A stretch of 64,000 nt of DNA from Haplodiscus bocki (Eukaryota): assembly GCA_965655095.1 (NCBI GenBank), contig OZ296650.1, positions 29,636,001-29,700,000 of the forward strand, read 5' to 3'. Below the pieces are notes generated by a model, which had not been told where the DNA came from, ran no database searches, and was given only the letters and a program-made list of their open reading frames with translations. A program made the translations under genes and the position numbers. Of this stretch, positions 16,701 through 43,081 are shown in pieces; positions within the stretch are counted from its first letter, which is position 1; every line of letters begins with the position of its first letter.

Positions 16701-19383
16701 ACAAACATAGCTAGAAATGCTTATGATGTCGCTTTTAGCTAGTTTTCAAAATGCCTTTTTTCCTAAACTACCCACTCAATTCTTTTCCTTCACGGCTTAA
16801 TCGACAGCTTACTTGGTCAATTCGTTCAAGTCGAGCAATTATTCTAGATTTTTTTCATTTTCAGGACATCCTGGTCTAAACTTTGCTACAAATAATTCTG
16901 ATTTCGATTTCTGAGAGTCTTCAAAGTACCGTTTTTCTTAATTGTTTTCATTCACAGCTGAATCGGCAGCTTGCTTTATGTCGTCGATTCTCTTAAGTTG
17001 AGTGCTTTTTACCGAGCTTGTTTTTTTCCAGACATGCTTTTGCAAATGCATCGGATGTTGATTTTACTCAATTTTCTAAAAGGTGATGTGATGATGATCA
17101 TGATCACAAAAGGTGATGTGATGAAGGTGATCTAGAGAGGATAAAATCCAAACCTTGCTTGAAAAGCGTGTGATATCGATTACAGTCAATTTTCATTTTG
17201 TTTCTCTCGAATTACTGACTCAGTTTCTTTCATCCAGTGTTTAATCAACTTCCCATTCTGGGTAGATTGATTTATCTAGTGTCAGTGTTTTAGTTTAAAC
17301 GATATTATTCATGAGTAGTATATGCGGGGGGGGGGGGGTCCCCGCAGAGTTTTATGGCTCCCGAAATTTTGTCACAGATTTTCTTGAACTTTTGGCTCAA
17401 AATGGCCCTAAACGGTAACCAAAAGGCGCATACAGTATTTCAAGAGCGAATGCAGTGTACTGGATCCGCATCCTAAACATTTACCTCAGGGAAAAGATGC
17501 GACTTTTAACTATTATAGATAGTTGTTTCATTCGACTTGATTAGAAACTACTCAAATATCAAAGTTTGAACAGCGTATAAAACTAGGCGACCCTTACTTA
17601 CCAACTTAGACGTTATGAACGCAGATTAAACATCTGCTGAACAAATCTGGGACAGGACAAACCCGAATTTGATAACAAATGAATGTTTCCTGCATGATGT
17701 CGAAAACGAAAACACTTGCTCAAATTGTCGTTTCTTCGTAAATTCCCATAGAAAAAATGGTTCCACATATCCGAGCTCAACACAACAAATGAAGTACAAT
17801 CTGAGCGAGCCCGAAAACTATATTTGAAAACAAGTAAACAGTTGTTGCAGGATGCTGAAGACGAAAATACTTGCTTGAAAAGTCGTTCGATCCCTTATTA
17901 GCATGGAAAAACATGGTTTTACAGCTGCAAAACCCACTAAATGTGACGTTTGCGCTTGGGTGAGCATAAAACCCGCATTGCAAGTTAACTAAAACTTGGT
18001 ATCAACATGCTGAAAAGCAGAAGACATTCTGAAAAAGCCGTTCTATCGCAATTTCGCATGGGAAAGAAAGTTTCACACTTCCGAACTGAACTCAATCTGA
18101 TGTGGAAGTTTGGGTGATCTCAATAACTATATTCGAAAACATGTCAACGATAGTGGCAGGTTGCTGAAGTTCAAGACTCTTTGAAAATGTCGTTTCTATT
18201 TCAATTGGCATCAAAAAGATAGTTTCGCAACTCCCAACTCACATAAAAATTTGACCTAGAAGTTTTGGTGAACCTCTATTTTATAGGAACCGTTCTAAAC
18301 ACAATTGAAAGTGAGCTGCATTATGCTGAACGCAAAGAAAATTCCCGAAAGTGTCGTTCTTTCGCAAGTACTCATCGAAGCAAAATCGTTTCACAAGTCC
18401 CAACCCTGAACGTTTGAAGTACAAGTTTGGGAGAGCCCAAAACCCTATTTGCAAGCTATTGAAGGTTTGTTACATGGTACCGAAGTAGAGAATTTTTTCC
18501 GAAACTGTCGCTTCTTCGTGGGCTCTTATTGAAAAGAGAGCCAGAACGAAGATACCTTTTGAGAACAAGGTTTCTTCATAAGTTGCATCAGAAATGATAG
18601 TTCTACATATCCGAAATCGCCCGAACAATTGATGTACAATTATGGGTAAGCCGAAAAAACTTGAGAGCAAGTAAAAGATAGCTGCGCGATGCCGAAAACG
18701 AAAATATTTTCTGTCAGCCAATCGGTTGACGTAAAACTCTTGGTAAACCCTAAAAATTTACTTGGATGCAAATAAATATTGGGCTCAACATGTCAAAATA
18801 AAAAGACATTCTGAAATACTGCTCTTACGTAAATTCGCAGCATAAGGCTTAGCTTTGCTCCTCCAACCCAAGCCAAAGGATTTCATGTACGACATTAAGC
18901 GCTTTGAAAAACACAAAAATCATAGTTGAAATGAGTGAAAGGTAGTCTCAGAACCCAAGAATGTCAAACAATTTCTGAAAATGTCGTTCACTCGCACCTT
19001 CAAAATGGAAAAGATGGTTGCACAACTCTGACTCCAACTGAAAATTCGACGCTCCATCGTAGCCCAACTAACTGTAAAAATTGCCCTCAAAAACAACTGG
19101 AACGAGCTGAAAGCAAAAACTTCCGGTGAAACTTGTTTTTCCTTCGTAAGGTGGCATGGAAAAACGTTTCTAACACAGAACTCAACCAAGCATTTGATCT
19201 ACAAGTGTGGAAAAGCACAAGAGCCACATTCAAAAACAAATCATCGCTAATTGCAGGATGCCGAAAACGACAATACACTGTGGAAATTTTGTAACTTCCT
19301 GAATTTGCAACGCAGACGATGGTGTCACAACGCTGAACTGCCAGAAAACTTTTGATGTACAAATTCGCCTGCGCTCGAAAATT
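13760..19383. repeat. Direct tandem duplication of ~2.8 kb (copy A 13760-16605, copy B 16606-19383)
   Basis: ATTCTCCAGATATGACGGTTAGA starts at both 13760 and 16606. The copies are colinear to CGCCTGCGCTC.AAAATT. Copy B lacks ~76 bp near its start. Confidence 0.95.
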
Positions 19384-20400
19384 ACATTTGAAAACAAGCA
19401 AACGCTGGTCCCATCATGCCGAATCGAAAACAATAGGTGAACAACTCCAAAATTAACTGAAGGTTAGTTGTACAAATTTGGCGCGCCCGAAAAATATTTT
19501 TCATTACAAATGAACGTTGGTAGAGCAATTCAGAAACATTGCAAACAGTCTGAACATTTCGTTCTTTCGTTGAATTCGCATCGAAGAAGATCGCTCAACA
19601 ACACCGAACTCTATACGTTTGAGGTTCGGGTTTTCCAGAGAACCGAGCCATATTTGGAAGAGTAAAAAAAAGTGGAATGATGCCAAAAAGGAAAATTGTT
19701 TGAGCTTTTTGTTTTTAGTAAAGTGTCATCAAAGCAGATGATTTTCACACCATGAAGCTCCTCGGAACTTTTGGTATACACATTTGAACGGGCCCAAAAA
19801 CCATATTTTGAAAGTCGTAAACATTACTCAAAGGATGCCGAAAAAAAAGATACTCTTGGAATGTATTCCTCGTACATTTGTACCGAAGATAGTTTTGCAC
19901 CTCCGAACACACCGAAACATTTAAAATACACAATTCGGTGAGTCCAAAAACCGTTTCCTCAAACAAATAGAAATTTTTATTCCAACATGTTGAACACCAG
20001 AAGTCATTCCGAAGACACTTGCTTTGCAAATTCGCGTATGAAACTTTATACACCCGAACCGAACAAAAGCTGATGTACAATTTTGGGCCGGCCCAATATC
20101 TACATTTGAAAACAAGTATTCATTGGTCTCAATATGCTGAAGTCCATAGCACATTCTGAAGGCTCCTTTTTTTACGCATCTGAATTCGGTTGAAAATAGT
20201 GATTCGTCAGTTTGGGCGATCTCGAAAACATACAAGAAGCCACAAATGAAAACCAATAAACGTTATTCGTGCAATGCTGGAACCTAAAAAGCTTTCATAA
20301 ATGTCGCTGCTTAGTAATTTTGAAGCCAACAGATGGTTTCGCAACACCAAACTCAACCAAATTTTAGACAGACAAGAGTTTAGTGCCCAAAAACAATATT
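14880..20400 (+). repeat. Degenerate ~155-bp tandem (satellite-like) repeat tracts: 14880-16605 and ~17655-20400, mirrored at ~25340-28095
   Basis: An ATTTGAAAACAA-like anchor recurs at 14894, 15049, 15204 and 15358, and at ~19228/19385 and ~19650/19804. Recurring ACATTCTGAAAA.GTCGTT and TTGATGTACAA.TTTGGG blocks lie between the anchors. Confidence 0.75.
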
Positions 20401-23400
20401 TTAATACAAGTGATCATTAGCAGCGCACTGGCTAAATATAAATTATGGTGTTTGGAGAAGGCTGATTATTCAGCAATAAAGACTGTCAAAGTAAATCCAG
20501 ATGTATTCTACTGCGTCTATCGGCCGTTCGCTTCCCGGATTGAGGAGAGTTGTTTAAAGTGGCCGACAGAATCGTTCAACATTCGAGACATATATGAAAG
20601 TCAAAAGATCGCTGAGAAACCGAAAGTTGTCTACATTGTTTCCAGACAAATACTGGTTCGGTAGTGTATACACGTGGCCTTAAACAAGTAACGTAGTCAC
20701 CTTTACTTTGAATATTCCGTCCCACAGATATCCAGCGAACATTCACAAGATATTTCCTCTTTCAATGAAGAAAGTCAGATTAACAAAGGTGAAAATCTCT
20801 CCTGATCAATTCCTGTAAAGCCAAACGAGCTACATAAACAAGAATGGCGTTCAAACAGGTTTTATCTGTGTTAATAAACTCTGCGAATCACTGAAAATGA
20901 AATTAGACGATAACTCCAAAACGAACGTGCTCCAGTCTGGAGCAATTGAAACTCAAGTGGGATAAGTGTTCAGTGGCAAGACAACAGAACTCAAGTACCG
21001 CATAAACCGTTATACACTATGAGAAGTCGTGCACAGTAGTATAATTTAAAGTCGACAATAGATACAACATTGACTGCACTTGCTCCCATAATAGTGCTTC
21101 AGCGGAAGCAATTGTAGTAATCTCGTTGCAAAAAGTCTACGATAAAATTGTACACTATTTTATAAGTGAATAAAACGGACGAGGTTGTTTCATTGAACGT
21201 TTGTAGAAACAGTCAGTGATTTTTGAATTGCTTTAGTTATTACCGAAGGTCCCTTCTTTGACGATGTTAGAAGATTCATCATAGACTGGCCAATTTGGGG
21301 AAAATAGTGGTAGCTACTGCATGACTTGAAGATCATCGCTTGCAAGGCTTGGAGCGAAACCTTCATTTTCCTTCTAAAGCTGAAGCGATTACAGAAACGG
21401 CTGCTGTTTGGCATCCTTAGGTTCCCAATGCGGACAGTTTGCCGAAGCATCAGCATTCTCAGAACGGAATGAACTTCCGATTTGAGGAAGAGAAGACTTG
21501 ATCACAGTATGCCGATGCTGGATCCATAAACTGGATGCCCCACAACGCTCAAAAAGACCCGAGAGCTTCAGTGGAATTTTTGAACTCTCCATCGAACGTT
21601 CTTCGAATTGAACATGCGGAATAAAAGTTTAATGAATGGAACTTCTAACTTGACGGAAACCGTGTAGTCTGACCGGCTCAAAGCAACTTGTTAGTTAACA
21701 TCTTTCCATACTTGAACTAAATCAACCTGCAGAGATCAATTGGCTGATTGAATTCGATGCAATATTTCCTTCGCAAGTTTTCAAACGAAAAACCACAGCC
21801 CTACATCAATGATGTTCATAGCTAGTGTTTCGTGAAAAACACACGACCCTCGGAGACCCATTAGGTGTTTTGCTTCACTTTCAAAGTACAAGAGGTTTGG
21901 TTTATCAAAAGTTGAATGGATGAATTGGTATAACTTTTCAATTTCCCCAGTTCCACCTGAAAAATTCAAATTCTTCTGAAAACCAAGCGGATTTCAAAAC
22001 GGTTCATACACTATTCCAGTCTGCTCTGCGTAAGTCGACGTGGTAACCCAACGCCACGTTTGAGCAAAAATGACCTGTAGCGCCTACCTGAGTGGTTTTA
22101 ACCGATTTTTTCCAGTAACTTTATTCGACAAATTGAGGTGGAACTTTCAAAAATCAAGCTTCTTTCATCTCTGGTCGAAGATGAATAGTTTCTCAAAGTG
22201 ACCGCAATCGGTTGTTTGAAATACAGCATATCAGTCCACAGCCAAACTAAAACAGTCAAACAAATGAATTTTTAGTCGAAAACTCCTTTCAGCCATCTTT
22301 GAAATTAAAGATAAGGCGAGGAAAAAGGGACGGGCTGCTGCTCTAAGATGACAACCAGAATTTCATCAAGGGGCTCAGCAGTAATGGTATCATATTTTCT
22401 ATATGATTGACTGTAACTCAAAAGAACGAAGAGTTCTACCCTTCGGATGAACAACTTTATGAGCTCGCAGAGGCACATAAACAATTTAGAAATCAAAAAC
22501 AGCACAATGTGCCTCCGGGGGATGGACAAGTATTGCTAAAATTATGTTTCCACATCATACATTCAATCAGGAAGTATTCTAAGGCTTTCAATTACAACGT
22601 AGAAAAATCAGTCAGTCATCTAGCCTAGCTGCACGAATGCAATTACTTTGGGATGATTTTAGATCCCTATCCTTTGCTTCTCGGCTCATATGAGGATTGT
22701 TGAAGTAGAAGCACTCCGTAGTAATCAGACAGAGAGTATTGATAGAAGTAATCTTTCCACAAACCCGCGCCATGTTAGATGAAAAAAACCAAAATGAATG
22801 TCAGATCTTGAAAAACCTAAATGAGCTGTGAATTCCGCTTCGGCCAGTCAAAGAACCGACAGACACTTGAAAAAAGCCTGAGGCAGGGACGACGCACTAC
22901 GTTAGAGAACACTCAGCTAAGAAGTCAGGAAACCTACCGTCTTGAGAAACAGTTTGCGGGGTTGACTACAAAACTTTAAGGTTGGTATATTCGGTTACTT
23001 AACAGATTCTAATCGTGTATATCAATAGTGTCATTAGCAAAAAATGGAGAGATCATTGCTCAGCACAGACAATGTTGAGGATTCTCTTTTCCGATGAGAT
23101 TGAATCGTTTTGAGGAAATTGGCGAGTCGTGCTGAACAATTTCGATTGCAGCACTCTTGGGTGACCCTGCTTCAAAAAAAGAACTCACCTGCTTCCAAAG
23201 AAGTCTACGCCTTTGCTGCAAGCGGAGTGATCCGAAATGCTGAATGCCGTTTTCGACTCATGTCTGGTGAGCAATATCGCCGACAAAAAGCACTGAAACA
23301 ATAAATTCTTTGAAAACAGACATTGGAGCCTATGTTTTCAAGATTGAGTAAAAGGTGCACTTTCGGTGTTGAACATTGAGAGGGATCATTTCGGAGTTTT

Positions 23401-26400
23401 CTGCTTTGAGCGTCTCTTTTTCCTCGCCGGATCTTTAATTTCAAAGATGGCTGAAAGGAGTTTTCGACTAAAAATTCAATTGTTTGACTGTTTTAGTTTG
23501 GCTGTGGACTGATAGGCTGTATTTCAAACAACCGATTGCGGTCACTTTGAGAAGCTATTCATCTTCCAACAGAGAGGAAAGAAGCTTGATTTTTGAAAGT
23601 GTCACCTCAATTTGTCGACTAAAGTTACTGGAAAAAATTGGTTAAAACCACTCAGGTAGGCGCTACAGCTCATTTTTGCTCAAACGTGGCGTTGGGTTAC
23701 CACGTCGACTTACGCAGAGCAGACTGGAATAGTGTATGAACCGTTTTGAAATCCGCTTGGTTTTCAGAAGTATTTGAATTTTTCAGGTGGAACTGGGGAA
23801 ATTGAAAAGTTATACCAATTCATCCTTTCAACTTTTGATAAACCAAACCTCTTGTACTTTGAAAGTGAAGCAAAACACCTAATGGGTCTCCGAGGGTCGT
23901 GTGTTTTTCACGAAACACTAGCTATGAACATCATTGATGTAGGGCTGTGGTTTTTCGTTTGAAAACTTGCGAAGGAAATATTGCATCGAATTCAATCAGC
24001 CAATTGATCTCTGCAGGTTGATTTAGTTCAAGTATGGAAAGATGTTAACTAACAAGTTGCTTTGAGCCGGTCAGACTACACGGTTTCCGTCAAGTTAGAA
24101 GTTCCATTCATTAAACTTTTATTCCGCATGTTCAATTCGAAGAACGTTCGATGGAGAGTTCAAAAATTCCACTGAAGCTCTCGGGTCTTTTTGAGCGTTG
24201 TGGGGCATCCAGTTTATGGATCCAGCATCGGCATATTGTGATCAAGTCTTCTCTTCCTCAAATCGGAAGTTCATTCCGTTCTGAGAATGCTGATGCTTCG
24301 GCAAACTGTCCTCATTGGGAACCTAAGGATGCCAAACAGCAGCCGTTTCTGTAATCGCTTCAGCTTTAGAAGGAAAATGAAGGTTTCGCTCCAAGCCTTG
24401 CAAGCGATGATCTTCAAGTCATGCAGTAGCTACCACTCTTTTCCCGACATTGGCCAGTCTATGATAAATCTTTCTAACATCGTCAAAGAAGGGACCTTCG
24501 GTAATAACTAAAGCAATTCAAAAATCACTGACTGTTTCTACAAACGTTCAATGAAACAACCTCGTCCGTTGTATTCACTTGTAAAACAGTACAATTTTAT
24601 CGTAGACTTTTTGCAACGAGATTACTACAATTGCTTCCGCTGAAGCACTATTATGGGAGCAAGTGCAGTCAATGTTGTATCTATTGTCGACTTTGAAATA
24701 TACTACTGTGCACGACTTCTCATAGAGTGTATAACGGTTTATGCGGTACTTGAGTTCTGTTGTCTTGCCACTGAACTCTTATCCCACTTGAGTTTCAATT
24801 GCTCCAGACTGGAGCACGTTTGTTTGAGTTCTCGTCTAATTTCATTTTCAGTGACTCACAGAGTTTATTACCACAAATAAAACCTGTTTGAACGCCATTC
24901 TAGATTTATGTAGTTCGTTTGCTTTTACAGGAAATGATCAGGAGAGATTTTTCACCTTTGTTAATCTGACTTTCTTCATTGAAAGAAAAGACATCTCGTG
25001 AATGTTCGCTGGATATCTGTGGGACGAATTATTCAGAGTAAAGGTGACTACGTTACTTGTTTAAAGGAGACCCCGTGTAAATGTTAGCGAACCAGTATTT
25101 ATCTGGAAACAATGTACAGAGTTTTCAGTTTCTCAGCGATCTTTTCACTTTCATTTTTGTGTCGAATTTTGAACGATTATGTCAGCCTTTTTAAACAACT
25201 CTTCAATACGCGAAGCGAACGGTCGATAGACGGAGCAGAATACATGTGGCTTTACTTTGACAGTCTTTGTTGAAGAATAATCAGTCTTCTCTAAACACCA
25301 TAATTTATATTTAGGCAGTGCGCTGCTAAAGATCACTTGTATTAAAATATTTTTGGGCAGTAAACTCTTTTCTGTCTAAGATTTGGTTGAGTATGGTGTT
25401 GCGAAACCATCTGTTGGCTTCAAAATTGATAAGCAACGACATTTATGAAAGTCTTTTAGGTTCCAGCATTGCACGAATAACGTTTATTGGTTTTCATTTG
25501 TGGCTTTTTGTATGTTTTCGAGATCACCCAAACTGATAAATTACTATTTTCAATCGAGTTCAGATGCGTAAAAAAAAGAGGAGCCTTCAGAATGTCCTAT
25601 GGTCTTCAGCATAATGAGACCAATGATTCCTTGTTTTCAAAAGTAGTTATTGGGCCCACCCAAAGATGTACATCAGATTTTTCCCAGTTCGGGGGTGTAA
25701 AAATTTTTCATATTCGAATTTGCGAAGCAAGTGTCTTCGGAATGACTTCTGGTGTTCAACATGTTGGAAGAAAAACTTTTGTTTGTTTGAGAAAACGGTT
25801 TTTGGACTCACCAAATTGTGTTTGTTAAATGTTTCGGTGTGTTCAGAGGTTTAAAACTATCTTTGATACAAATGTACGAGGAATACATTCCAGGAGAGTA
25901 TGTTCATTTTCGGCATCCTTTGAGTAATGTTTACCACTTTCAAAATATGGTTTTTGGGCCCATCCAAATGTGTTTACCAAAATTTCAGAGGAGCTTCATG
26001 GTGTGAAAATCATCTGCTTTGATGCCACTTTACTAAAAACAAAAAGCTCAAACAATTTTCCTTTTTGGCATCATTCCACTTTTTTTACTCTTCCAAATAT
26101 GGCTCGGTTCTCTGGAAAACCCGAACCTCAAACGTATAGAGTTCGGTGTTGTTGAGCGATCTTCTTCGATGCGAATTCAACGAAAGAACGAAATGTTCAG
26201 ACTGTTTGCAATGTTTCTGAATTGCTCTACCAACGTTCATTTGTAATGAAAAATATTTTTCGGGCGCGCCAAATTTGTACAACTAACCTTCAGTTAATTT
26301 TGGAGTTGTTCACCTATTGTTTTCGATTCGGCATGATGGGACCAGCGTTTGCTTGTTTTCAAATGTAATTTTCGAGCGCAGGCGAATTTGTACATCAAAA

Positions 26401-28994: not shown

Positions 28995-29324
28995 GAAACG
29001 GTGAAAATTATTGTGGAAAAATTGTTGCTTTTTTGGCATGGATATACGTCTGTTTTTTTTTGCAGTGAGTTTGCGTTGGCGAAGATTGGTAAATTGAAAG
29101 ATCTGAGTTTTTTCTTGGGCGCAGATACTTCTGCACCGTCTAAGTACGTATGCCATCGTTTTATCAGAGCCTGATGAATTTTTTAACTGGCCCCTCAAAT
29201 GTTAAAAAGAACCATCATTTGGGTTCTTTTTAACATTCAAAAGAAACATTCAAAATTTTGAATGATATTGCCAAAATTATTCCAATATAAAGAAAATTAC
29301 CCTCAAAATTTGATTATATGGGGG

Positions 29325-30983: not shown

Positions 30984-31182
30984 ATTTTCCGTTGTAATTT
31001 ATTACGAAAGGAAAATTTTCCCTCAGTAGGTTGACTTTTTCTCTGGAATTTGCCAATTCGGAGAGAACATGTTCAAGATTTTTTAAACACCAAAATGTTC
31101 CTATGTACTCGTGGAATGCTGTTCTGACAATCTCGACTAAATAATTTCGCGGAAAGGCCGAACATTTTTCGCCCAAATTCCG

Positions 31183-34100
31183 AGTCAATTTGCAGCCCTG
31201 TAAGAAGAAACAAATGACATAATAAGACCAAAAACGCGATCAATCTGATGAAATTAGTTCCAACTTCCAAGTTTCTTTCGCAGGAAAAAAACCGAAGAAA
31301 ACCTCGGGCCACAACCCGAACTGAGTGTGCAATAACAAAAGTCTCCCTGCTCAGGTCAGCTTGTGCAAAATTCAGCCCATTTGGATTCCTACATTCGACT
31401 TTATTGCAGAGGAAAATATCCGAAAATTCTGGTACTGCAAACCAGGAACTCGGACATAGAAGTTCTCGCCAGCGTTGTCAAAATTGCTTTGTGCTTATAC
31501 TGAAAAATATTTTTGGGAAAAACAAATTTCAGGAAAAATCGAGAATCCGAAAAATCTGCGTTCAAAAAATGAAAACCTCGTAGGAGTGGATAACGGACGT
31601 TCAAAATAGTTTGGCGTTATAAGCACTCCATCCCTGAACCTTGTTTTCAGGATCAAAGGTGCTGCAGAGAAACGACGAAAAGATGTTTAGAACTATGTGG
31701 CTATTAGTATTAAGGACATGGGGCGGGTTTAAATGAAAGTTTTGACTCACAAACCAAAAAAAAACTTGATTTCAAGAAGTTCGAATTCAACGGAACCTGA
31801 AATTCGTTGACTGAGTACACAGTAAAACAACACTCCGAATTCGTTGACAATGCAAATTTTTTACGTAGACCTGACAGTTTTACAATTGTTCCCTTGAACA
31901 ATTTTGACTTCTGTTAGCGAGTTTTCCATTATAAGACTAATGCTTCTTCATTGACTAATGATACAATTTTGAGAGGAAAAACATCATTTTTCAAACACCC
32001 CACATTTTGTACGTTTTAGAACTACTTAGTCGCACTCTGCAAATGAAGAAATCCTAAACTCAAGAACGGAAAGTAGCATCACCTTGGACGTTATCAATTG
32101 ACAAATTGAAATTCAAAAGGACACGTGAAAAAAGATTGATCAATATCGCATTTGATGTCATGATTTTCCTTTCACATTTGTTTTTGGGTGAAAAGTCAAA
32201 ACAGTCTGAGCGAGTCCAAGACACGAAATGGGCAAAACCTAAATGTTAATTTTAAAATGCGTTAAACCAAAAAAAACATTCTGCAAAGCCGTGGTTTAGC
32301 AAATTCACACCAGAAGAGATAATTCAGAAACTCCTAACTCGGTTGAACATTTGATGCAAAACTGTGGCTGGTCCCAAAAACATACTGCGAAACAATTAAA
32401 CAGCAGTCTGACAAGGTTCAAAAACCAAAAATTTTGAAAAGTTTGGACTGAGACTAAAATTACCCAAGCAAACTAACCGTTCCAGGAAGAAATGTGGGAG
32501 AGGCCAAAAGCATATTGGAAAAACAATTGAACGTTAGTGTTACAACGCCTCAACTCGACGGACCTTCGGAATAAGCTGCTGTTCCATGAAACCACATCAA
32601 AACGTTACTATTACAATTCGAACTTGATTAATTGTTCGTGGGTGAGTCTGGAAACTGAAAAAAAATCCCAGCTCGCTTAAATTTGTATTGCACTGGCTTG
32701 AGAAACCGCAAGACCAATTGGTAGCAAAAAAACGAAACTGTTATAAAAAAAGAAAACTAAATGTATCTTTGAAAATGCCTTGCTTTGCAAAAATGTCAAA
32801 ATGGTTGCGGTAGACCTGCAATGAAAACACTTGTTATACTAGTCTTGAAGAGCAATAGCCATCTTCTGAGAAAATTCAAAGCAGGTTTCAATGCCAATGA
32901 CGTAAAAAGTTGTTGAAAACTGCAATGTTTCTTTTCAATAAACATCAAGAAACGAGGCTTCACACAGTTAATTTTTTCAAATTATCATTCTTTTCGCTAC
33001 ACTTAAAAACCCAAAAACTTTATTGAAAATTAACTGCGCGTTTCTATCATACTATATGAAACCAAAACAAGTTCTAAAAATGCTGTTCCCTTGCAAACTA
33101 AGCATCAAAGAGTGCTTCAGTTCCGTGATTTGTACTACACTTTTGGATGGCCTTTTGAAAGCGCAAAAGAAGTTTCGGAGCTACGAATTATTCCTACTAT
33201 GTAACAGTAAACCCAAAGTCTCTCTGAAAATGCGGTGCATTTGATAATTACTTTTTTAAAAGTGAATCGACACTTTCGACCTCAACTAAACAGGTACGTA
33301 GAATATGTAAAAGTACCGATTACACCAAAAACATAATGAAAACAGTTGACCGTTAGCTTCATTTTTTACCAAACGAAGCTCTTCTCATAAAACACCATCT
33401 TGTGGCGAAGTCCCAACCGGGAAGGTGTATCTAGTCGTCTGCACAAAACTAAGAATTCAATGTACAACCTTGCAAAGGCCAAAAAACAAACTGTAAGCTT
33501 TGAAAAGTTACTCTTGATTTGCGGCAAACACAAATTTGTCTGTGTCTTTTTCTGCAAATTCACATCAAAAGGTTGTTGTAGAGCTCTGATTTTAGGTAAA
33601 CAAATGACCTACAAGTCTGAAGGAGCTCACAAAGCAACATGGAAAATATTTCAGCACAATTCCAACAACTCAGTAAATGAAAGTCCTGAAAATGAAGCAT
33701 TTCTGCAAGCTAACATCAAAAATGCAACTTGAGTTGAAGCATACGTTTCCTGTACAATTCGTGTTGAACTCAAAAGAAAATTATGAAACACTACAGTTAG
33801 TTCACGCTTCAATGAATCTTTCTAGAGTGCCGCACCTCCCGCATTTTGGAGCAGAGGTGGTTATAGTCTTGATAGTGCAATCAAAAAAATTTCAGAGGAA
33901 TTCTGGGACAAATCTAGAAACCACGTGAGGAAAACAATTCAACGTAAATGGGCATCAGGTTTACTCAAAAGATTTTTTCAAAAAAAACCACGGCTGTTTC
34001 TTGAAAAAAAAACATGAAAATGTTCGAAGTCAAACACTCAAATACAATTGAATTAAGGTACTGCTTTATCGATTGAGCATGAACAGCACAAGGACTGCAA

Positions 34101-37100
34101 ACCAAAGTTGAATTCATGGTAGCTAGAAGCAAGATTTCCTGAAAAATCGAATCCGTTGCCAGCACACAACAAAAAAAATTCCAGTACACTTCACTGGAGT
34201 ATCGTTGTTTTTAAAGACGTTTAACAGTCTAACGACCAGTTTTAAAACTGAAAAGTTCAATGCAAACTGATAAGTCATTCAAGAAGTACCTTTTTTCTCT
34301 GAAACAACAACACGACCGGTGGTTGTAAACATTCGTTATCAACTGAAAACTCGATGTGCAGAACAGTGCGACCTCAAAAACTCTCATTTTTTTGGTAAAC
34401 TCTCATTGTATTCATGACAATGTATTCACAGCGAATTACAATAAAAGCGGGAACAGGTCTAAAAAATGTTTTTTAATTAGCTTCCAAGTTAGAAAAGAGA
34501 GAAGTGGACAACATTTTTTCACTGGGAAGCAATTTTTTCTAGCATTTATGAGCAATCTTAGTACAAACAGCGGCTCAACAGAAATTTCGCTTTTACAGTC
34601 CCCACTCTATTCTGGTGCAAAAAATAGGTGCGTGAAAATAGTGTTGATCACTGCTGCCGCAGAAGGAAGCTGTTGTTTTATTTTGTTATGTGGAAAAACT
34701 GATGAAACTGAACTGTACGGTACTAACAACAAAAGATGACTCGATGTGAATGGATACAAGCAACACCTCTGTTTGAACTTCTGAGAGTTCGCCCATTTTC
34801 TTCCTAAATTATATAAACATTGGGTTTTCTAGAAGATCAGCTCTTGCATCCCCAACGTTTTTCGACTGTGAAATTTAGCTGCGTCAAAACAGTTTGGAAA
34901 AGTACTGCCACAAAAGTAAGCTGCATTTTGGTTTTGATCAGTGGATAATTTGGTGAAACTCAAATGTATGGAAGTAATTACGTTTATTTGATCTGAGTGA
35001 ATGCAAGAAACAGCGCTGCTTGAAGTTCTGAACAATTGCCCGCACTGTTCCAAGTTTCACATCAAACTAACTGATTACTCAATTTGACTAAAGGATCAAC
35101 AAAAACCAGTTCAAAACATGAAATTGTTGATGTGCTGAAACAAAAGAAACGGAAACGCTTCGCAAGAAATATCGTCAGCAATTCAATTCTCAACTTTCAA
35201 AATGTTTCTAAGCCTGTTTCAAAACTCACCTCTAATCGACCACATCAGAGGTCATGAAAGGCAGTCCTGAAACACCTGGTGAAGAATAGCGATTTGAGGA
35301 TTGAGAGTCAAAAAAGCTCGACTCGGAGAATCCATAAATCAAGAACCCTAAAAAAGGCAGCTCCATTGAAAATGTTGCATATCGATATTATTCCTAAAAA
35401 GTCTGTCTGAATGTCTGAATGCCTCTATCAGCAGAACTTCAAACCTGACTTGGAACATTGAACATTTGGGATTTTCCCTTTAATTTTCTGTCTTCCAATA
35501 CTTAGGGAAGAGAGGCATCTTGATTTTGTTCAGTGATGAAGTCCCCAGTGCTCTCTAAACTGAAAAGTTCTTCAAATTTTTGAGAGGTAGTACCGTACTT
35601 CAGAGGGTAAGAAAGGGCGAAGCGAACTTTGGGCAAGGCAGCGAGTGGATCCCAGGAGGCTTCGTTTTCGACGCTGTTTCCCAGCCCCTCAACTATCGTA
35701 CCTTGAAGAAAAAATTGCGCAGTCTTCCACAAGAAAACTTCGACTTTAGGCTAATTCTGCTTTTTTAAATTGTTTGTAGTAGAAGTGTTCTATGAATATT
35801 AGCATTTGCTGTAATGCAGTCGACCATTTTTTGTTTCCTTTCGAAATACGTTTTCAAGCAACTCCTAATACCTTTCTTCAATGCGCATCTTGGATTCATC
35901 CTTTTGGAGATGAACCACTTTTTAGTTGGAACTTAACGAGTAAAATAGAGTCTGAATAGTTGGACTTTTTACTGCAGACGCTGGTTGTCTTTTTCAGTAA
36001 CTCTCGATTCAAATCTGACTGTTTTACAACTCGGCAGAAACAATATGAGCAGACACTTTTTCACCAAGCCAATTTTCAACGCTTTGAATAAAAGGGATCC
36101 TCTTATGCAAGCTATCTGATAGGCTCTACTGAGGTTGAAAAACTGCTTGTTGCTTTTGATCCTAGATAATTTCGCTGCTTGAAACTCAATAAACAATCAA
36201 GCATGAGTGCTTGAGCTAACAAATTGTGTCCATCAATCCAAATGACTGAGGCTCATTAACATTATTTGCCTTTTATTGCAATTTTTTCATATTCACGGTT
36301 TATCGTCTGTGGGAAGAATTTGGCAACTAACCAAACTTGAAAACAGCGATTGCTCCTTGAAAGTTTCCATATGAGGTACATATGCCACTCTCTTTTAGAG
36401 GCACCTCACAATATGAGTCGGATCGAATATTGGAACTGTGCACTGTTTGTTTCTCAAAATTTCGCAGCTAACATCGAAGGGTCTGCAAAAGGTTCAAGTT
36501 GGAAAATTCAAAAAAAAGTCTTCCTCCGAATTGGATGAAGGCTCCTGCAAAAAATGTAGTGTAACCGCGAGGAGAAAGATTTTCAAGCTCTTGACTGACC
36601 TAATTTTGATTGGATCAAATCGTTGGACTGATGATTCGCTCAAATGACGTCCGTCTGAAGTTATTACCAATTCGTGGCGATTGAAAAACTGCAAAATGAA
36701 ACCAAGCGTGAAGACAGAGATTTCTAACTTTTTCATATCTTGTTCTTTCCGTACTGAAGAAGCACCTTCTAGAAAAAGCACAAAATATTTCTTTTCCCCC
36801 TATGTATAATATATTCGACTGTAAATCTTTGTTCCTGCGTTTGCTAAAGGAGGCATCTTTGTCCAGGCGAAAGTCACAAACAGCATTAATCAATTGTATT
36901 TTCTCCGCTTTCAACAGTTGATTCAGGATCTCCTTGAAAGTCTTCAGTTTTGGTTGCCCAAAAACACAGCAACAAAACAATGCAATTTCGATCAGCCATA
37001 GTTTCAAAAGAATGCGAAGTCATCAGAATGCTAACTCACTAACGAAAGATTTTGAGTAACCACTTGCAGCCAGAAAAAGGGGAAACCTACAAAACCTAGA

Positions 37101-40100
37101 TGCGGAAATGCGCATTGCTGACTGCCAAAAACATAGATTAGCGATATCTATTGAAAACGCTGAATGTCAAATTTTGATGACTTCGCATTCTTTTGAAACT
37201 ATGGCTGATCGAAATTGCGTTGTTTTGTTGCTGTGTTTTTGGGCAACCAAAAACTGAAGAGTTTTAAGGAGATCCTGAATCAACTGTTGAAAGCGGAGAA
37301 AATACAACTGTTCAATGCTGTTTGTGACTTCCCCCTGGACAAAGATGCCTCCTTTAACAAACGCAGGAACAAAGATCTACAGTCGAATAAATTATACATA
37401 GTGGAAAAGAAATGTTTTGTGCTTTTTCTAGAAGGTCCTTCTTCAGTATGGAAAGAACACGATTTGAAAATGTTAGAAATCTCTGTCTTCACGCTTGGTT
37501 TCAATTTGCAGTTTTTCAATCGCCACGAATTTGTAACGACTTCAGACAGATGTCAATTGAGCGAATCATCATTCCAACGATTTGATCCAATCAAAAATAG
37601 GTCAGTCAAGAGCTTGAAAATCTTTCTCCCCGCGGTTACACTACATTTTGTGCAGGAGCCCTCATCCAATTCGGAGGAAGACTTTTCTTGAATTTTCAAC
37701 TTGAACCTTTTGCAGACCCTCCGATGTTAGCTGCGAAGTTTTGAGAAACAAACAGGGCACAGTTCCAATAGTCGATCCGACTCATATTGTGAGATGCCTC
37801 TGAAAGAGAGTGGCATGTGTGCCTCATATGGAAACTTTCAAGGAGCAATCGCTGTTTTCAAGTTTGGTTAGTTGCCAAATTCTTCCCACAGACGATGAAC
37901 CGTGAATATGAAAAAATTTGCATTAAAAGGCAAATATTGTTAAGGAGCCTCAATCATTTGGATTGATGGACACACTCTGTTAGCTCAAGCACTTACGCTT
38001 GATTGTTTATTGGTTTCAAGCAACGAAATTATCTAGGATCAAAAGCAACAAGCAGTTTTTCAACCTCAGTAGAGCCTATCAGAAAGCTTGCATAAGAGGA
38101 TCCCTTTTATTCAAAGCGTTGAAATTTGGCTTGGTGAAGAAGTATCTACTCATATTGTTTCTGCCGAGTTGTAAAACCGTCAGACTTGAATCGAGAGTTA
38201 CTGGAAAAGACAACGAGCGTCTGCAGTAAAAAGTCAAACTATTCAGACTCTATTTTACTCGTTAAGTTCCAACTAAAAATTGGTTCATCTCCAAAAGGAT
38301 GAATCCAAGATGCGCATTGAAGAAAGGTATTAGGAGTTGCTTGAAAAAGTATTTCGTAAGGAAACAAAAAATAGTCAACTGCATTACAGCAAGTGCTAAT
38401 ATTCATAGAACACATCTACTACAAACAAGTTAAAAAAGCAGAATTAGCCTAAAGTCGAAGTTTTCTTGTGGAAGACTGCGCAATTTTTTCTTCAAGGTAC
38501 TATAGTTGAGGGGTTGGGAAAGAGCGTTGAAGACTAAGCTTCCTGGGATCCACACGCTGCCTTGCCCGAAGTTCGCTTCGCCCTTCCTTACCCTCTGAAG
38601 TACGGTACTACCTCTCAAAAATTTGAAGAACTTTTCAGTTTAGAGAGCACTGGGGACTTCATCACTGAACAAAATCAAGATGCCTCTCTTCCCTAAGTAT
38701 TGGAAGACGGAAAATTAACGGGAAAATCCCATTTGTTCAGTGTTCCAAGTGAGGCTTGAAGTTCTTCTGATTGAGGCATTCAGACATTCAGACAGACTTT
38801 TTAGGAATAATATCGATATGCAACATTTTCAATGGAGCTGGTCTTTTTAGGGTTCTTGATTTATGGATTCTCGGAGTCCAGCCTTTTTTGACTTTCAATG
38901 CTCAAATCGCTATTCATCACCAAGTTTTTCAGGACTGCTTTTCAAGACCTTTGATGTGGTCGATTAGAGGTGAATTTTGAATCAGGCTTAAAAACATATT
39001 GAAAGTTGAGAATTGAATTGCTGACGATATCTCTTGCGAAGCGTTTCTATTTTTTTGTTCTAACACAACATTAATTTCATGTTTTGAACTGGTTTTTGTG
39101 GATCCTTCAGTCAAATTGAATGTTTAATAAGTTTGATGTGAAACTTGGCACAGTGCGGGCAAATGTGCAGAAATTCAAGCAGCTCTGTTTCTTGCATTCG
39201 CTCAGATCAAGTAAACGTGTTCATTTTCATACATTTGAGTTTCACCAAATTATCCACTGATCAAGACAAAACAGCAACTTGCTTTTATTGCAAAACTTTT
39301 CCAAAATGTTTTGATGCAGCTAAATTTCACAGTATAATAGCGTTGGGGATGCAATAGCTGATTTTCTAGAGAACCCAATGTTCAAACAATTTAGGAAGAA
39401 AATGGGCGAACTCTGAGAAGTTCAAACAGAGCTGTTGCTTGTATCCATTCACATCGAGTCAACATTTGTTGTTAGTACCGTACAGTTCAGTTTCATCAGT
39501 TTTTCCAAATATCAAAATAAAACAGCAGCTTCCTTCTGCGGCAGCAGTGATCAACACTATTTCCACGCACCTAATTTTTACACCAGAATGGAGTGGGGAC
39601 TGCAAAAGCGAAAGTTCTGTTGAGCCGCTGTTTGGACTGAGATTGCTCATAAATGCTAGAAAAAATTGCTTCCCAGTGAAAAATTGTTGTCCACTTCTCT
39701 CTTTTCTAACTTGGAAGCTACTTAAAAAACATTTTTTAGACCTGTTCCCGCTTTTATTGTAATTCGCTGTGAATACATTGTCATGAATACAATGAGAGTT
39801 TACCGAAAAAAATGAGAGTTTTTGAGGTCGCACTGTTCTGCACATCGAGCTTCCAGTTGATAACGAATGTTTAAAACCACCGGTCCTGTTGTTCTTTCAG
39901 AGAAAAAAGGTACTTCTTGAATGACTTATCAGTTTGCATTGAACTTTTCACTGTTTTGAAACTGGTCGTTAGACTGTTAAACGTCTTTAAAAACAACGAT
40001 ACTCCACTGAAGTGACCTTGAAATTTTTTTGTTGTGTGCTGGCAACGGATTCGCTTTTTCAGGAAATCTTGCTTCTAGCTACCATGAATTCAACTTTGGT

Positions 40101-43081
40101 TTGAAGTCCCTGTGCTGTTCATGCTCAATCGATAAAGCAGTACCTTATTTCAATTGTATTTGAGTGTTTGACTTCGAACATTCCGATGTTTTTTTCATGA
40201 AACAGCTGCTGTTTTTTTTAATAAAAAATCCTTTGAGTAAACCTGATGCACAATTACGTTGAATTGTTTTCCTCACGTGGCTTTTAGACTTGTCCCAGAT
40301 TTCATCTGAAGTTTTTTTTATTGCACTATCAGGACTATAACCACCTCTGCTTCAAAATGCGGGAAGTGCAGCACTCTAGAAAGATTTTTTGAAGCGTGAA
40401 CTAACTTTAGAGTTTCATAATTTTGTCTTGAGTTCAACACGAATTGTACAGGAAACGTATGCTTCAACTCAAGTTGCATTTTTGATGTTAGCTTGCAGAA
40501 ATGCTTCATTTTCAGGACTTTCATTTACTGAGTTGATGGAATTGTGCTGAAATATTTTCCATGTTGCTTTGTGAGCTCCTTCAGACTTGTAGGTCATTTG
40601 TTTACCTAAAATCAGAGCTCTACAACAACCTTTTGATGTGAATTTGCAGAAAAAAACACAGACAAACTTGTGTTTGCCGCAAATCAAGAGTTACCTTTCA
40701 AAGCTTTCAATTTGTTTTTTGGCTTTTGCAAGGTTGTACATCGAAATCCTAGTTTTGTTCAGACGACTAGATACACCTTCCCGGCAGGGACTTTGCCACA
40801 GGATGGTGTTTTATGAGAGGAGCTTCGTTTCGTATAAAATGAGGCTAATGGTCAACGGTTTTCCAGTATGGTTTTGTTGTAAACGGTACTTGTAAATCTT
40901 GTACTTGCCTGTTTAGTTGAAGCCGAAAGTCTGGATTAACTTTTAAAAGAAGAATTATTAGGAGCACCGCAATTTCAGAGAGTTTTTGGGTTTACCGTTA
41001 CATAGTAGGAATGCTCATAGCTCCTAAATCTCTTTTGCGCTTGCAAAAGGCCAACCAAAATTGTAGCACAAATCACCAAACTGAAGCACCATTTGATGAT
41101 GAATTTGCAAGGGGAACAGCGTTTTTAGAACTTGTTTTGGTTTTATATAGTATGATAGCAACGCTCAGTTAATTTTCAATAAAGTTTTAGGGTTTTTAAT
41201 TGTAGCGAAGAGAATGTTAATTTGAAAAAATTAACTGTGTGAAGCCTTGTTTCTTGATGTGTATTGGAAAAAAAACATTGCAGTTTTCAACAACCTTTTT
41301 CGTCATAGGCGTTGAAAGTTGCCTTGATTTTTCTCAGAAGATGGCTTTTGCTCTTCAAAACTAGTATAACAAGTGTTTTCATTGCAGGTCTACCGCAACC
41401 ATTTTGACGTTTTTGCAAAGCAAGGCATTTTCAAAGAGACATTTTGTTTTTTCGTTTTATATCAGTTGCGTTTTTTTGCTACCAATTGGTCTTGCGGGTT
41501 CCCCAAGCCAGTACAATGCAAATTTAGGCGAGCTGGGATTTTTTTTCAGTTTTCAGACTCGCCCACGAACATTTAATCAAGTTCGAATTGTAATAGTAAC
41601 GTTTTGATGTGGTTTTGTGGAACAGCAGCTTATTCAGAAGGTCCGTCGAGTTGAGGCGTTGTAACACTAACGTTCAATTGTTTTTCCAATATGCTTATGG
41701 ACTCTCCCACATTTCTTCCTGGAACGGTTAGTTTGCTTGGGTAATTTTAATCTCAGTCCAAACTTTTCAAATTTTTTGGTTTTTGAACCTTGTCAGACTG
41801 CTGTTTAATTGTTTTGCAGTATGTTTTTGGGACCGGCCACGGCTTTGCATCAAATTTTCAACCAGGTTAGGAGTTTCTGAATTATCTCCCTTTGTGTGAA
41901 TTTGCTAAAACACGGCTTTTCAGAATGTTTTTTTTTGGTTTAACGCATTTTAAAATTAACATTTAGGTTTTGCCCATTTCGTGTCTTGGACTCGCTCAGA
42001 CTGTTTTGACTTTTCACCCAAAAACAAATGTGAAAGGAAAATCATGCCATCAAATGCGATATTGAACAATCTTTTTTCACGTGTCCTTTTGAATTTCAAT
42101 TTGTCAATTGATAACGTCCAAGGTGACGCTACTTTCCGTTCTTGAGTTTAGGATTTCTTCATTTGCAGAGTGCGACTAAGTAGTTCTAAAACGTACAAAA
42201 TGTGGGGTGTTTGAAAAATGATGTTTTTCCTCTCAAAATTGTATCATTAGTCAATGAAGAAGCATTAGTCTTATAATGGAAAACTCGCTAACAGAAGTCA
42301 AAATTGTTCAAGGGAACAATTGTAAAACTGTCAGGTCTACGTAAAAAATTTGCATTGTCAACGAATTCGGAGTGTTGTTTTACTGTGTACTCAGTCAACG
42401 AATTTCAGGTTCCGTTGAATTCGAACTTCTTGAAATCAAGTTTTTTTTGGTTTGTGAGTCAAAACTTTCATTTAAACCCGCCCCATGTCCTTAATACTAA
42501 TAGCCACATAGTTCTAAACATCTTTTCGTCGTTTCTCTGCAGCACCTTTGATCCTGAAAACAAAGTTCAGGGATGGAGTGCTTATAACGCCAAACTATTT
42601 TGAACATCCGTTATCCACTTCTACGAGGTTTTCATTTTTTGAACGCAGATTTTTCGGATTCTCGATTCTTTTCCTGAAATTTGTTTTTCCCAAAAATATT
42701 TTTCAGTATAAGCACAAAGCAATTTTGACAACGCTGGCGAGAACTTCTATGTCCGATTTCCTGGTTTGCAGTACCAGACTTTTTGGATATTTTCCTCTGC
42801 AATAAAGTCGAACACCGAACGACTTCTGGTCAAAATGGCTGAAAAAGTTATTTTCCGAATGTAGGAATCCAAATGGGCTGAATTTTGCACAAGCTGACCT
42901 GAGCAAGGAGACTCTTTTTTATTTTTGCACACTCAGTTCGGGTTGTGGCGCGAGGTTTTTTTCGGTTTTTTTTCCTGCGAGAGAAACTTGGAAGTCGGAA
43001 CAATTTTTTTTCATCAGACTGATCGCGTTTTGTCTCTTAATATACGTCATTTGTATCTTCTTACATGTCTCCATATTGACT
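31183..43081. repeat. Giant inverted repeat P2: arms 31183-37029 and 37171-43081 (~5.9 kb each), spacer ~140 bp
   Basis: The arms are reverse complements. Mirrored ORFs: 34356-34739(+)/39459-39845(-), 35580-35768(+)/38430-38618(-), 36615-37007(-)/37215-37691(+). Centre: GAATGCGAAGTCATCA ... TGATGACTTCGCATTC. Confidence 0.97.

What the first reader, a model, noticed from the sequence alone, without database searches (positions are those of the whole stretch)
16753..43081. Two adjacent ~12-kb non-coding palindromes built to a shared plan: candidate giant foldback family
Seen: P1 (arms ~5.6 kb) and P2 (arms ~5.9 kb) are 2.2 kb apart, similar in size, and have no recognisable transposase. They are not copies of each other, yet both carry the same degenerate ~155-bp repeat in the same orientation in the left arm. 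Compare 32280-32400 (acattctgcaaagccgt...aacatttgatgcaaaactgtggctggtcccaaaaacata) with 15250-15360. Known: foldback elements such as Drosophila FB have long inverted repeats containing internal tandem repeats, and long palindromes with short spacers are normally unstable. Inference: this is either a family of very large foldback elements or a genome-wide process that turns satellite-containing DNA into palindromes and keeps them.
Basis: partly seen in the sequence, partly recalled or inferred. Interest (0 to 1): 0.82.

Follow-up and report, generated by a model that had tools for sequence, protein, structure and literature searches.

The report
Giant palindromic Maverick-linked transposon relics
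The two 12-kb mirror-image DNA blocks are real. They are gene-less members of a family of jumping elements built as giant palindromes, apparently derived from virus-like Maverick/Polinton transposons that are very abundant in this worm's genome.

Summary
Both palindromes are in the sequence as described. P1 has arms 16753-22332 and 23411-28994, 95.3% identical, with a 1078-bp loop. P2 has arms 31183-37029 and 37171-43064, about 93.5% identical, with a 141-bp spacer. The arms differ mainly by substitutions, so this is not read error.

Each palindrome belongs to a dispersed repeat family (72-81% identity between loci). Many other members are also palindromes.

- Six P1-family copies on different contigs share the same arm|loop|arm junction, so the palindromic plan is inherited.
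- The two families share a conserved end (AGTAGTA..., a G-run, and a 26-mer with 177 genome hits).
- Two P1-family copies carry 6-bp target-site duplications.
- The same end bounds about 15.4-kb units, and one of these holds an intact 1335-aa protein-primed DNA polymerase frame.
- In a related organism's assembly, complete 17-kb palindromic elements start AGTAGT, have perfect 6-bp duplications and carry a Maverick-type polymerase in each arm.

Best reading: P1 and P2 are non-coding, centre-deleted foldback derivatives of Maverick/Polinton-lineage elements. Their arms are kept alike by gene conversion.

Unexplained: both palindromes extend about 0.5 kb beyond the element end, and they sit side by side.

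The scan had already noted this same stretch (s1-382625, s1-382717) and another palindrome elsewhere in the genome (s1-376771).

The parts
13873..16608 (+). Partial tandem duplicate of the outer part of P1's left arm: 676 bp of flank, an element end at 14549, then about 2.06 kb of element
   Evidence: 95.7% identical to 16642-19383 and 95.5% to 28994-26367. The end core AGTAGTATATGC is at 14549.
16753..22332 (+). P1 left arm. 16753-17313 is DNA outside the family end. The family end is at 17314. The degenerate 155-bp array is at about 17617-20419.
   Evidence: Family matches elsewhere start at arm position about 558-562.
22333..23410 (.). P1 loop (1078 bp), which is part of the family. At least 7 further genomic places match it, and wherever the neighbourhood could be read it lies between inverted arms.
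   Evidence: The junction between the arm end (about arm position 5552-5580) and the far loop end (query position 6658, counted from the start of the left arm through the loop) recurs in the window, C1443, C3275, C8:62.45M, C3:5.27M and C6:2.39M.
23411..28994 (-). P1 right arm, with the family end at 28431 on the minus strand. The last 560 bp mirror the left flank.
31183..37029 (+). P2 left arm. 31183-31704 lies outside the family end and includes an unrelated short dispersed repeat of about 190 bp. The family end (variant type) is at about 31702-31705. The shared repeat zone is at about 32205-32544.
37030..37170 (.). P2 spacer (141 bp). It is homologous, in inverted orientation, to sequence that lies 93-211 bp further in towards the centre in other P2-family copies, so it is the remnant of a central deletion or rearrangement.
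37171..43064 (-). P2 right arm, with the family end at 42499 on the minus strand
13232..13426 (+). Context: the last coding exon of the SCOC gene, ending 444 bp before the first palindrome-related sequence
   Evidence: PF10224, E 2.6e-11, profile positions 34-72 of 75

Best explanation
P1 and P2 are old, gene-less members of two sister families of palindromic (foldback-type) transposons. These families use the ends of a Maverick/Polinton lineage.

Shown:
- The palindromes are real.
- Each belongs to a dispersed family.
- The arm-loop-arm plan of P1 is inherited, not made anew at each locus.
- Both families share one conserved terminal module that starts AGTAGTA.
- Family members integrated with 6-bp target-site duplications.
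- Within a locus the arms are 93-99.7% identical, against 70-81% between loci.
- The same terminal 26-mer bounds units of about 15.4 kb, and one of these contains an intact protein-primed polymerase frame.
- A related organism has complete 17-kb elements that are palindromic over their whole length, start AGTAGT, have 6-bp duplications and carry a Maverick-type polymerase in each arm.

Inferred:
- A strand-displacing, end-primed polymerase switched template during replication (copy-back). This gave a molecule with the same functional end on both sides.
- Such molecules were integrated by the Maverick machinery.
- Deletions at the unstable centre removed the genes, leaving non-coding palindromes such as P1 and P2 that were moved in trans.
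- After insertion, arm-to-arm gene conversion kept the arms similar in patches.
For: Real, not error:
- Arm differences are 228 and 349 substitutions against 17 and 19 indel events.
- Short contigs that match each arm variant exactly are present in four runs from two samples.

Family:
- P1-arm matches at 72-81% identity lie on at least 12 contigs. At least 9 of about 21 loci are inverted pairs.
- P2-arm matches include the palindromes L013 (99.7% arms), L015, L019 and L020.

Inherited plan:
- The loop and its junction are homologous in six loci.

Shared ends:
- Searches show the common terminal module.
- The 26-mer has 177 genome hits within 2 mismatches, against 0 for the control. Seventy hits are exact, although the element bodies are about 25% diverged.
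- In the listed rows, 14 end pairs face each other and 2 face apart. Five of the facing pairs are spaced 15.37-15.52 kb.

Target-site duplications:
- L004 has GACATG/GATATG and L012 has GACGTG/GACATG, in direct orientation (sequences printed).

Polymerase link:
- A PF03175 hit at C12:38557672-38559045 (E 3.5e-21, 1335-aa open frame) lies inside the end-bounded unit C12:38547622-38563088.
- A polymerase fragment lies 1.3 kb inward of a P2-family arm in L016.
- In this genome that polymerase occurs in at least 28 (-,+) pairs, 9-34 kb apart, against one (+,-) pair.

Related assembly:
- Two complete elements of 17.03 and 17.06 kb have arms 95-98% identical, ends starting AGTAGT, and perfect duplications CAGGTA and ATCATA.
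- Three further polymerase loci were read. Two show the same layout and two show the end.

Polymerase identity:
- Alignment A3 shows the family-B motifs KLLNNAFYGKTMEN and YMDTDS.
- The A3 profile finds proteins of 1150-1430 aa, among them ones carrying PF03175 (E 1.8e-25) or PF02945.
- Insect Maverick polymerases have the same two domains (PMC5803895).
Against: - P1 and P2 themselves have no testable target-site duplication. In both, the inverted homology runs about 0.5 kb past the family end into DNA not shared with other members. Simple transposition of a palindrome does not predict this.
- The link to Mavericks rests on one polymerase hit in 11 end-bounded units. Only 91 of 10,958 first-look candidates were scored, and that hit lies on the strand opposite to the one seen in the palindromic relatives.
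- Beyond AGTAGT and a G-run/C-run, the ends in this genome and in the related assembly do not align.
- No integrase was recognised in the palindromic relatives.
- L010 shows no duplication.
- No read spanning either centre could be shown.
- Copy-back is an inference from structure only.
Confidence: 0.6

Rival explanations
1. Local palindrome formation: single-arm repeat copies, with their flanks, were turned into palindromes where they sit. This would be a general chromosomal process such as fold-back repair of a break, a replication U-turn or break-induced replication. The family would then be ordinary, and only the palindromes would be secondary.
For: - The inverted homology includes non-family flank DNA in P1 (560 bp), P2 (about 520 bp), L009 (about 1 kb) and L011 (about 50 bp).
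- The window holds two more small palindromes, and L019 holds another.
- P1 also carries a partial tandem duplication.
Against: - The same loop and junction occur in six dispersed, 70-77%-identical copies.
- L004 and L012 have 6-bp duplications around whole palindromes.
- The related assembly has complete palindromic elements with perfect duplications.
- Facing end pairs outnumber pairs facing apart 14 to 2, with a sharp size mode.

A local process probably acts in addition to transposition, but it is not the origin of the plan.
Confidence: 0.15
2. Classical foldback DNA transposons of a cut-and-paste superfamily: FB/MULE-like, or Galileo/P-like. These would have long, internally repetitive inverted ends and would be unrelated to Mavericks.
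For: - The arms are long and carry internal tandem repeats.
- Copies vary through central deletions.
- The arms are non-coding.
- The overall resemblance to FB, Galileo and Tetris elements (PMC4079207, PMC3573991).
Against: - The duplication is 6 bp. From memory, FB makes 9 bp and Galileo 7 bp.
- No Tnp_P_element match exists anywhere in the genome.
- No scored MULE hit lies in any end-bounded unit (only 150 of 598 candidates were scored).
- The AG start, 6-bp duplication and polymerase association fit Polintons instead.
Confidence: 0.1
3. Assembly artefact: fold-back chimeric reads, or two haplotypes joined in opposite orientation.
For: - 200-N scaffold gaps sit at palindrome centres or arm ends in 5 of the 20 loci fetched.
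- L001 ends in a 260-bp fold-back right at a gap.
- No spanning record could be shown.
Against: - The arms differ by 5-7%, almost all substitutions, in a patchy pattern.
- P1 and P2 are gap-free.
- The architecture is shared by copies about 25% diverged.
- The same architecture, with target-site duplications, appears in a separate assembly.
Confidence: 0.03

Closest known systems
Polinton/Maverick self-synthesising transposons (Kapitonov & Jurka 2006; Pritham et al. 2007; reviewed in PMC6431247)
   Same: - Ends start AG.
- 6-bp target-site duplications.
- Inverted terminal repeats.
- Units of 15-17 kb.
- A protein-primed family-B polymerase with an endonuclease-VII-like part, as in insect Mavericks (PMC5803895).
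   Different: - P1 and P2 have no genes at all, and their inverted repeats take up the whole element apart from a short centre.
- In the palindromic relatives every gene is present twice, in mirror image.
- No integrase, packaging ATPase, protease or capsid gene was recognised in those relatives.
- Whole-length palindromic Mavericks were not found in the papers searched.
Foldback elements: Drosophila FB, Galileo and Tetris (PMC4079207, PMC3573991, PMC4168063)
   Same: - Long inverted arms with internal tandem repeats.
- Short or absent middle.
- Many internally deleted, non-coding copies.
- Ends conserved better than the interior.
   Different: - The arms here are 5-8 kb. Galileo's are about 1.2 kb.
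- The duplication length differs.
- No MULE or P transposase is linked to these ends.
- The associated protein is a DNA polymerase.
Copy-back or snap-back defective genomes of linear replicons, and the inverted chimeras made by phi29 polymerase in multiple-displacement amplification (from my own knowledge, not checked here)
   Same: - One genome end is duplicated in inverted orientation around a short loop, so both ends carry the same origin.
- A strand-displacing, end-primed polymerase is involved.
   Different: Those are extrachromosomal or test-tube products. Here the products are integrated, inherited, multiplied to families and millions of years old.
Large chromosomal palindromes kept alike by arm-to-arm gene conversion (for example sex-chromosome palindromes; from my own knowledge)
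   Same: - Arms are much more alike than independent copies are.
- Identity is patchy, with perfect blocks next to diverged ones.
   Different: Those palindromes are single-locus gene amplicons, not mobile families with conserved ends.

Membership tests
Foldback-type transposon (structural class) | Inverted repeats make up most of the element, with a short or absent middle | tested here: met
   P1: 2 x 5.58 kb plus 1.08 kb. P2: 2 x 5.9 kb plus 0.14 kb.
Foldback-type transposon (structural class) | Dispersed copies with conserved ends and unrelated flanks | tested here: met
   Ends were aligned in more than 15 loci whose flanks differ. The terminal 26-mer has 177 hits against 0 for the control.
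Foldback-type transposon (structural class) | Target-site duplication around the whole palindrome | tested here: inconclusive
   Met at 5 of 6 bases in L004 and L012, absent in L010. Perfect in two elements of the related assembly. Not testable for P1 and P2 because their flanks are themselves mirrored.
Foldback-type transposon (structural class) | Tandem sub-repeats inside the arms | tested here: met
   P1 has about 18 degenerate 155-bp units. P2 has only about 2.
Polinton/Maverick | [quoted passage not shown] | tested here: inconclusive
   Absent from P1 and P2. Present in one of 11 end-bounded units and in all palindromic relatives read. Its identity is supported.
Polinton/Maverick | Retrovirus-like (rve) integrase | tested here: not met
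   No integrase domain was found in the frames of the 17-kb relatives. The 15.4-kb units of this genome could not be read.
Polinton/Maverick | 6-bp target-site duplication and 5'-AG ends | tested here: met
   All ends start AGTAGT.
Polinton/Maverick | Capsid, packaging ATPase and protease genes | not tested
None was seen among the relatives' frames scanned against Pfam.
Helitron/Helentron | Rep/helicase gene linked to the ends | tested here: not met
   150 of 181 Helitron_like_N candidates were scored, and none lies inside an end-bounded unit.
P superfamily (Galileo-like) | P-type transposase | tested here: not met
   PF12017 has no match in the genome. The control genomes were also silent, so this is weak evidence.
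MULE/FB | MULE transposase linked to the ends; 9-bp duplication | tested here: not met
   No scored MULE hit lies in the units (150 of 598 scored). The duplication is 6 bp.

The most novel reading that the evidence does not exclude
Acoel genomes carry a large, unreported lineage of Maverick/Polinton-derived elements whose normal integrated form is a whole-length palindrome, with every gene mirrored and the polymerase reading outward in each arm. These elements would replicate by hairpin or copy-back synthesis rather than by the standard two-ended protein-primed mode, and the endonuclease-VII-like part of the polymerase might act on cruciform or hairpin DNA. P1 and P2 would be gene-less survivors of this lineage. 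They show that one functional end plus a fold-back is enough for propagation.
Probability: 0.3. Interest if true: 0.88.

Novelty: new variant of a known kind. Interest (0 to 1): 0.72.

Why it matters
Long palindromes with short spacers are usually unstable. Here they are heritable, multiplied to families, and tied to a self-replicating virus-like transposon.

If the copy-back reading is right:
- It gives a simple route by which a linear, end-primed replicon produces foldback transposons.
- It explains why both ends are identical.
- It offers a natural system for studying palindrome maintenance, through arm-to-arm conversion, central deletion and assembly breaks.

It also matters in practice:
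- These elements break assemblies. Scaffold gaps sit at their centres.
- They may form kilobase-long hairpin RNAs when transcribed, for example downstream of SCOC.
- They could make up a sizeable share of this 1.5-Gb genome.

Tried and rejected
- TRF does not report the 155-bp array. It only appears with a low-stringency self-BLAST.
- Pfam on the longest frames of the arms and of family copies found nothing meaningful. tblastx between diverged P2 arms scores all six frames alike, so the arms are non-coding.
- Rfam found no family in the arms. In particular there is no hammerhead, which argues against my early Penelope-like idea.
- My early reading of P2 as LINE-like, with variable starts and a constant end, was an artefact of where my query ended. 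Other copies continue 450-730 bp further.
- An automated exact search for target-site duplications found none. The 6-bp duplications appeared only after the end was redefined as AGTAGTA.
From then on only coordinates came from this genome. Letters for comparison came from ENA contigs of a related organism through the look-up of encoding contigs.
- Helitron, MULE and P-transposase searches gave no link to the end-bounded units.
- A metagenome scan for the end motif found nothing. The findings index searched by sequence and by words also found nothing.
- Read laying returned only short Logan contigs, with none shown to bridge the P2 centre.
- Pfam, PHROGs and PDB sequence searches on the polymerase fragments were silent or sub-threshold.
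- The AlphaFold model was too poor to use (pLDDT 41), so no fold search was run.
- Two ENA look-ups failed because the called genes were not continuous frames.


Full report
**1. Observation**

The window contains no N. A self-comparison finds two large imperfect palindromes.
- P1 is 16753-22332 against 28994-23411, 95.3% identical, with a 1078-bp loop.
- P2 is 31394-37029 against 42812-37171, 93.5% identical, with a 141-bp spacer.
- Alignment of the outer edges extends P2 to about 31183/43064, across a 47-bp indel.
- The outer 2.7 kb of P1's left arm is also tandemly duplicated: 13873-16608 matches 16642-19383 at 95.7%.

The arms differ by 228 (P1) and 349 (P2) substitutions but only 17 and 19 indel events. 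The transition/transversion ratio is about 1. Blocks of 100% identity lie next to blocks of 84-88%. That is the pattern of real divergence with patchy homogenisation, not of long-read error.

No long open frame lies in the arms. There is no Pfam domain and no Rfam family.

P1 and P2 share only weak similarity in one zone. That zone is a degenerate 155-bp array with about 18 units in P1 and about 2 in P2. TRF does not see it.

**2. Both arms are dispersed repeats, and the relatives are palindromes too**

The window is C3:29636001-29700000 of a 1.5-Gb, 6626-contig genome. Earlier scan notes call the organism an acoel worm. I did not check that.

The P1 arm matches about 20 other loci at 72-81% identity. 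The P2 arm matches many more; 1521 first-look candidates were found and 34 scored.

In the 20 loci I fetched, P1-family matches always begin at arm position about 558-562. Flanks beyond that point are unrelated between loci, which defines an element end.

At least nine P1-family loci are inverted pairs. Many have asymmetric central deletions: both outer ends are intact and the middle is missing (L004, L009-L012). P2-family palindromes are L013, L015, L019 and L020.

Within every palindromic locus the arms are 93-99.7% identical, although different loci are only 70-81% alike.

**3. The palindromic plan is inherited**

P1's loop is itself a family sequence with at least 7 further genomic matches.

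The junction between the arm end (about arm position 5552-5580) and the far loop end (query position 6658, counted from the start of the left arm through the loop) is homologous, base for base, in six loci: the window, C1443, C3275, C8:62.45M, C3:5.27M and C6:2.39M. These copies are 70-77% identical, so the arm-loop-arm layout predates their divergence and was copied around the genome as a unit.

This also rules out an assembly artefact as the source of the architecture.

For P2, other copies run 450-730 bp further towards the centre than the window copy. The window's 141-bp spacer is an inverted piece of that extension. So P2 carries a central deletion or rearrangement.

**4. A shared end**

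P1-family ends read (CATG)AGTAGTATATGC, then a G-run, then TCCCCGCACAGTTTCATGGCTCCCTA.
- Three P2-family copies (L013, L016, L019) carry this same module.
- The others, including the window's P2, carry a variant that starts TAGTAGTAAGG followed by a G-run.

In the window the ends lie at 14549(+), 17314(+), 28431(-), 31705(+) and 42499(-).

The 26-mer has 177 genome matches within 2 mismatches, against 0 for the reversed control. Seventy matches are exact, even though the element bodies are about 25% diverged. So the end is under constraint.

Among the listed matches, 14 pairs face each other and 2 face apart. Five of the facing pairs are spaced 15.37-15.52 kb, and four more 13.9-15.9 kb.

**5. 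Target-site duplications**

With the end set at AGTAGTA, the six bases outside the two ends are direct repeats.
- L004: GACATG / GATATG.
- L012: GACGTG / GACATG.
- L010: none.

These sequences are printed. Several independent left flanks end in GACATG, which suggests a target preference.

**6. Link to Maverick/Polinton elements**

Searches of this genome:
- Helitron: no hit inside the end-bounded units.
- MULE: no scored hit inside them.
- P-transposase: no hit in the genome at all.
- PF03175 (protein-primed polymerase): one hit, C12:38557672-38559045, E 3.5e-21, in a 1335-aa open frame. It lies inside the unit C12:38547622-38563088, which is bounded by exact inverted 26-mers.

With 91 scored hits and about 170 kb of such units in 1.5 Gb, about 0.01 such coincidences are expected by chance. 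This is still a single case. The hit reads inward, as in a canonical Maverick with its polymerase on the opposite strand.

A polymerase fragment also lies 1.3 kb inward of a P2-family arm in L016.

Using that fragment to search the genome gave 150 scored matches out of 18,829 loose candidates. At least 28 pairs lie in (-,+) orientation, 9-34 kb apart (mostly 12-16 kb), with near-equal scores. Only one pair is (+,-). So these polymerase genes sit in mirror-image pairs reading outward.

**7. Complete examples from a related assembly**

The word search returned 1318 relatives, all from one ENA assembly (ERZ26859043) and all unnamed. The tool states that records of the window's own genome may be left out. 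The best identity was 86%, so I treat this assembly as a related organism.

- Contig ctg68032 holds a 17.03-kb element. Its arms are about 8.3 kb and 97-98% identical (157 substitutions, 8 indel events). The centre is about 0.2-0.5 kb. Each arm carries a polymerase reading outward plus a 181-aa frame. The ends start AGTAGTAGGCATAATCGC, with GGGGGACCC further in. The duplication CAGGTA/CAGGTA is perfect.
- Contig ctg88819 holds a 17.06-kb element with ends starting AGTAGTGTGTATAATCG and a perfect duplication ATCATA.
- Three more polymerase loci were read. Two show a palindrome centre 4-6 kb upstream of the polymerase, and two show the same kind of end 0.9-1.5 kb after it.

I only observed and described these copies. 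I built no consensus and repaired no frame.

**8. Identity of the polymerase**

Pfam, PHROGs and PDB searches on the fragments were silent or sub-threshold. The structure model was unusable.

Other evidence identifies it:
- The 42-sequence alignment shows family-B motifs B and C.
- The language-model atlas places both halves next to clusters carrying PF03175 and PF02945.
- An exhaustive profile search found 17,716 cluster representatives, typically 1150-1430 aa. Of seven that I scanned against Pfam, one has PF03175 (E 1.8e-25) and two have Endonuclease_7.
- The same two-domain make-up is reported for insect Maverick polymerases (PMC5803895).

No integrase was recognised in the palindromic relatives. 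By the published definition, a Polinton has a polymerase plus an rve integrase (abstract of PMC5499653, listed). On that definition the relatives are not full Polintons.

**9. Mechanism**

Shown: palindromic units with conserved AG ends were integrated with 6-bp duplications and multiplied. Gene-less versions (the P1 and P2 families) share the ends of about 15.4-kb units, at least one of which has a polymerase.

Inferred:
- A strand-displacing, end-primed polymerase switches template and copies back. This gives a molecule with the same end on both sides, so both ends are competent for replication and integration.
- Deletions at the centre then strip out the genes.
- Trans-mobilisation spreads the short forms.
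- In the chromosome, conversion between the arms keeps them alike in patches.

Estimated confidence:
- The palindromes are real: about 0.9.
- They form a mobile palindromic family: about 0.85.
- They are of Maverick lineage: about 0.6.
- They arose by copy-back: about 0.35.

**10. What does not fit**

- In P1, P2, L009 and L011 the mirrored sequence runs 50-1000 bp beyond the family end. In P1 and P2 those outer parts contain other short dispersed repeats. I could not decide between them.
- P1 and P2, from different families, lie 2.2 kb apart. That is unlikely by chance at the observed density.

**11. Reads and assembly**

Four runs from two samples of one study hold the P2 centre region, but only as short contigs. 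Contigs that match each arm exactly are present. None was shown to bridge the spacer.

Scaffold gaps of 200 N lie at the centre of two palindromes (L011, L013) and at arm ends in three more loci. So these structures break assemblies, and very young, near-identical ones are probably under-represented.

**12. Literature**

Full-text searches found foldback elements (FB, Galileo, Tetris) and many Polinton papers. None describes Mavericks that are palindromic over their whole length, or gene-less palindromic derivatives of them. The library does not hold most subscription journals, so this is not proof of novelty.

**13. Verdict**

The 'giant foldback family' reading is supported and sharpened. 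I class it as a new variant of a known kind.

Noticed in passing
window 13232-13426 (+): This is the last coding exon of SCOC (PF10224, E 2.6e-11, profile positions 34-72 of 75). The palindromes begin 444 bp after its stop. They are therefore downstream of the coding part, in the 3' UTR or intergenic DNA.
   Followed up: partly
window 47080-47886 and 62829-63470: Two small self-palindromes (807 bp at 88% and 642 bp at 95%). The second matches plant miRNA hairpin models below their thresholds, which is simply the signature of a long hairpin. Their ends do not carry the AGTAGTA motif.
   Followed up: partly
window 2495-6239: A 1.24-kb unit is repeated three times head to tail at 99.4-99.6% identity.
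   Followed up: no
G000 C4:89626760-89648685 (L006); C4:19190564-19241677; C7:24783995-24794594: Truncated family arms are amplified as head-to-tail arrays. One array has a 5.73-kb period. The terminal 26-mer recurs every 2.19 kb over at least 51 kb, and every 2.117 kb at a third site. This looks like satellite formation from the element end.
   Followed up: no
G000 C3:133755737-134306972, C9:1745968-1829638, C1:21122427-21241465: Helitron-like Rep hits sit in open frames of 1600-2780 aa and are arranged in arrays with a period of about 15-17 kb.
   Followed up: no
L001, L011, L013, L014, L019: 200-N scaffold gaps lie exactly at palindrome centres (L011, L013) or where an arm stops (L001, L014, L019). 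The assembler breaks at these structures.
   Followed up: partly
G000, whole genome: The loose first look found 10,958 (PF03175) and 18,829 (L016-type fragment) polymerase candidates. Only 91 and 150 of these were scored. If most are real, Maverick-lineage DNA makes up a substantial share of the genome.
   Followed up: no
L019:71-559 (+): A frame resembling the C-terminal end of the polymerase (judged by eye only, with no database support) lies 1 kb outside the end of a P2-family palindrome. This suggests nesting of one element in another.
   Followed up: no
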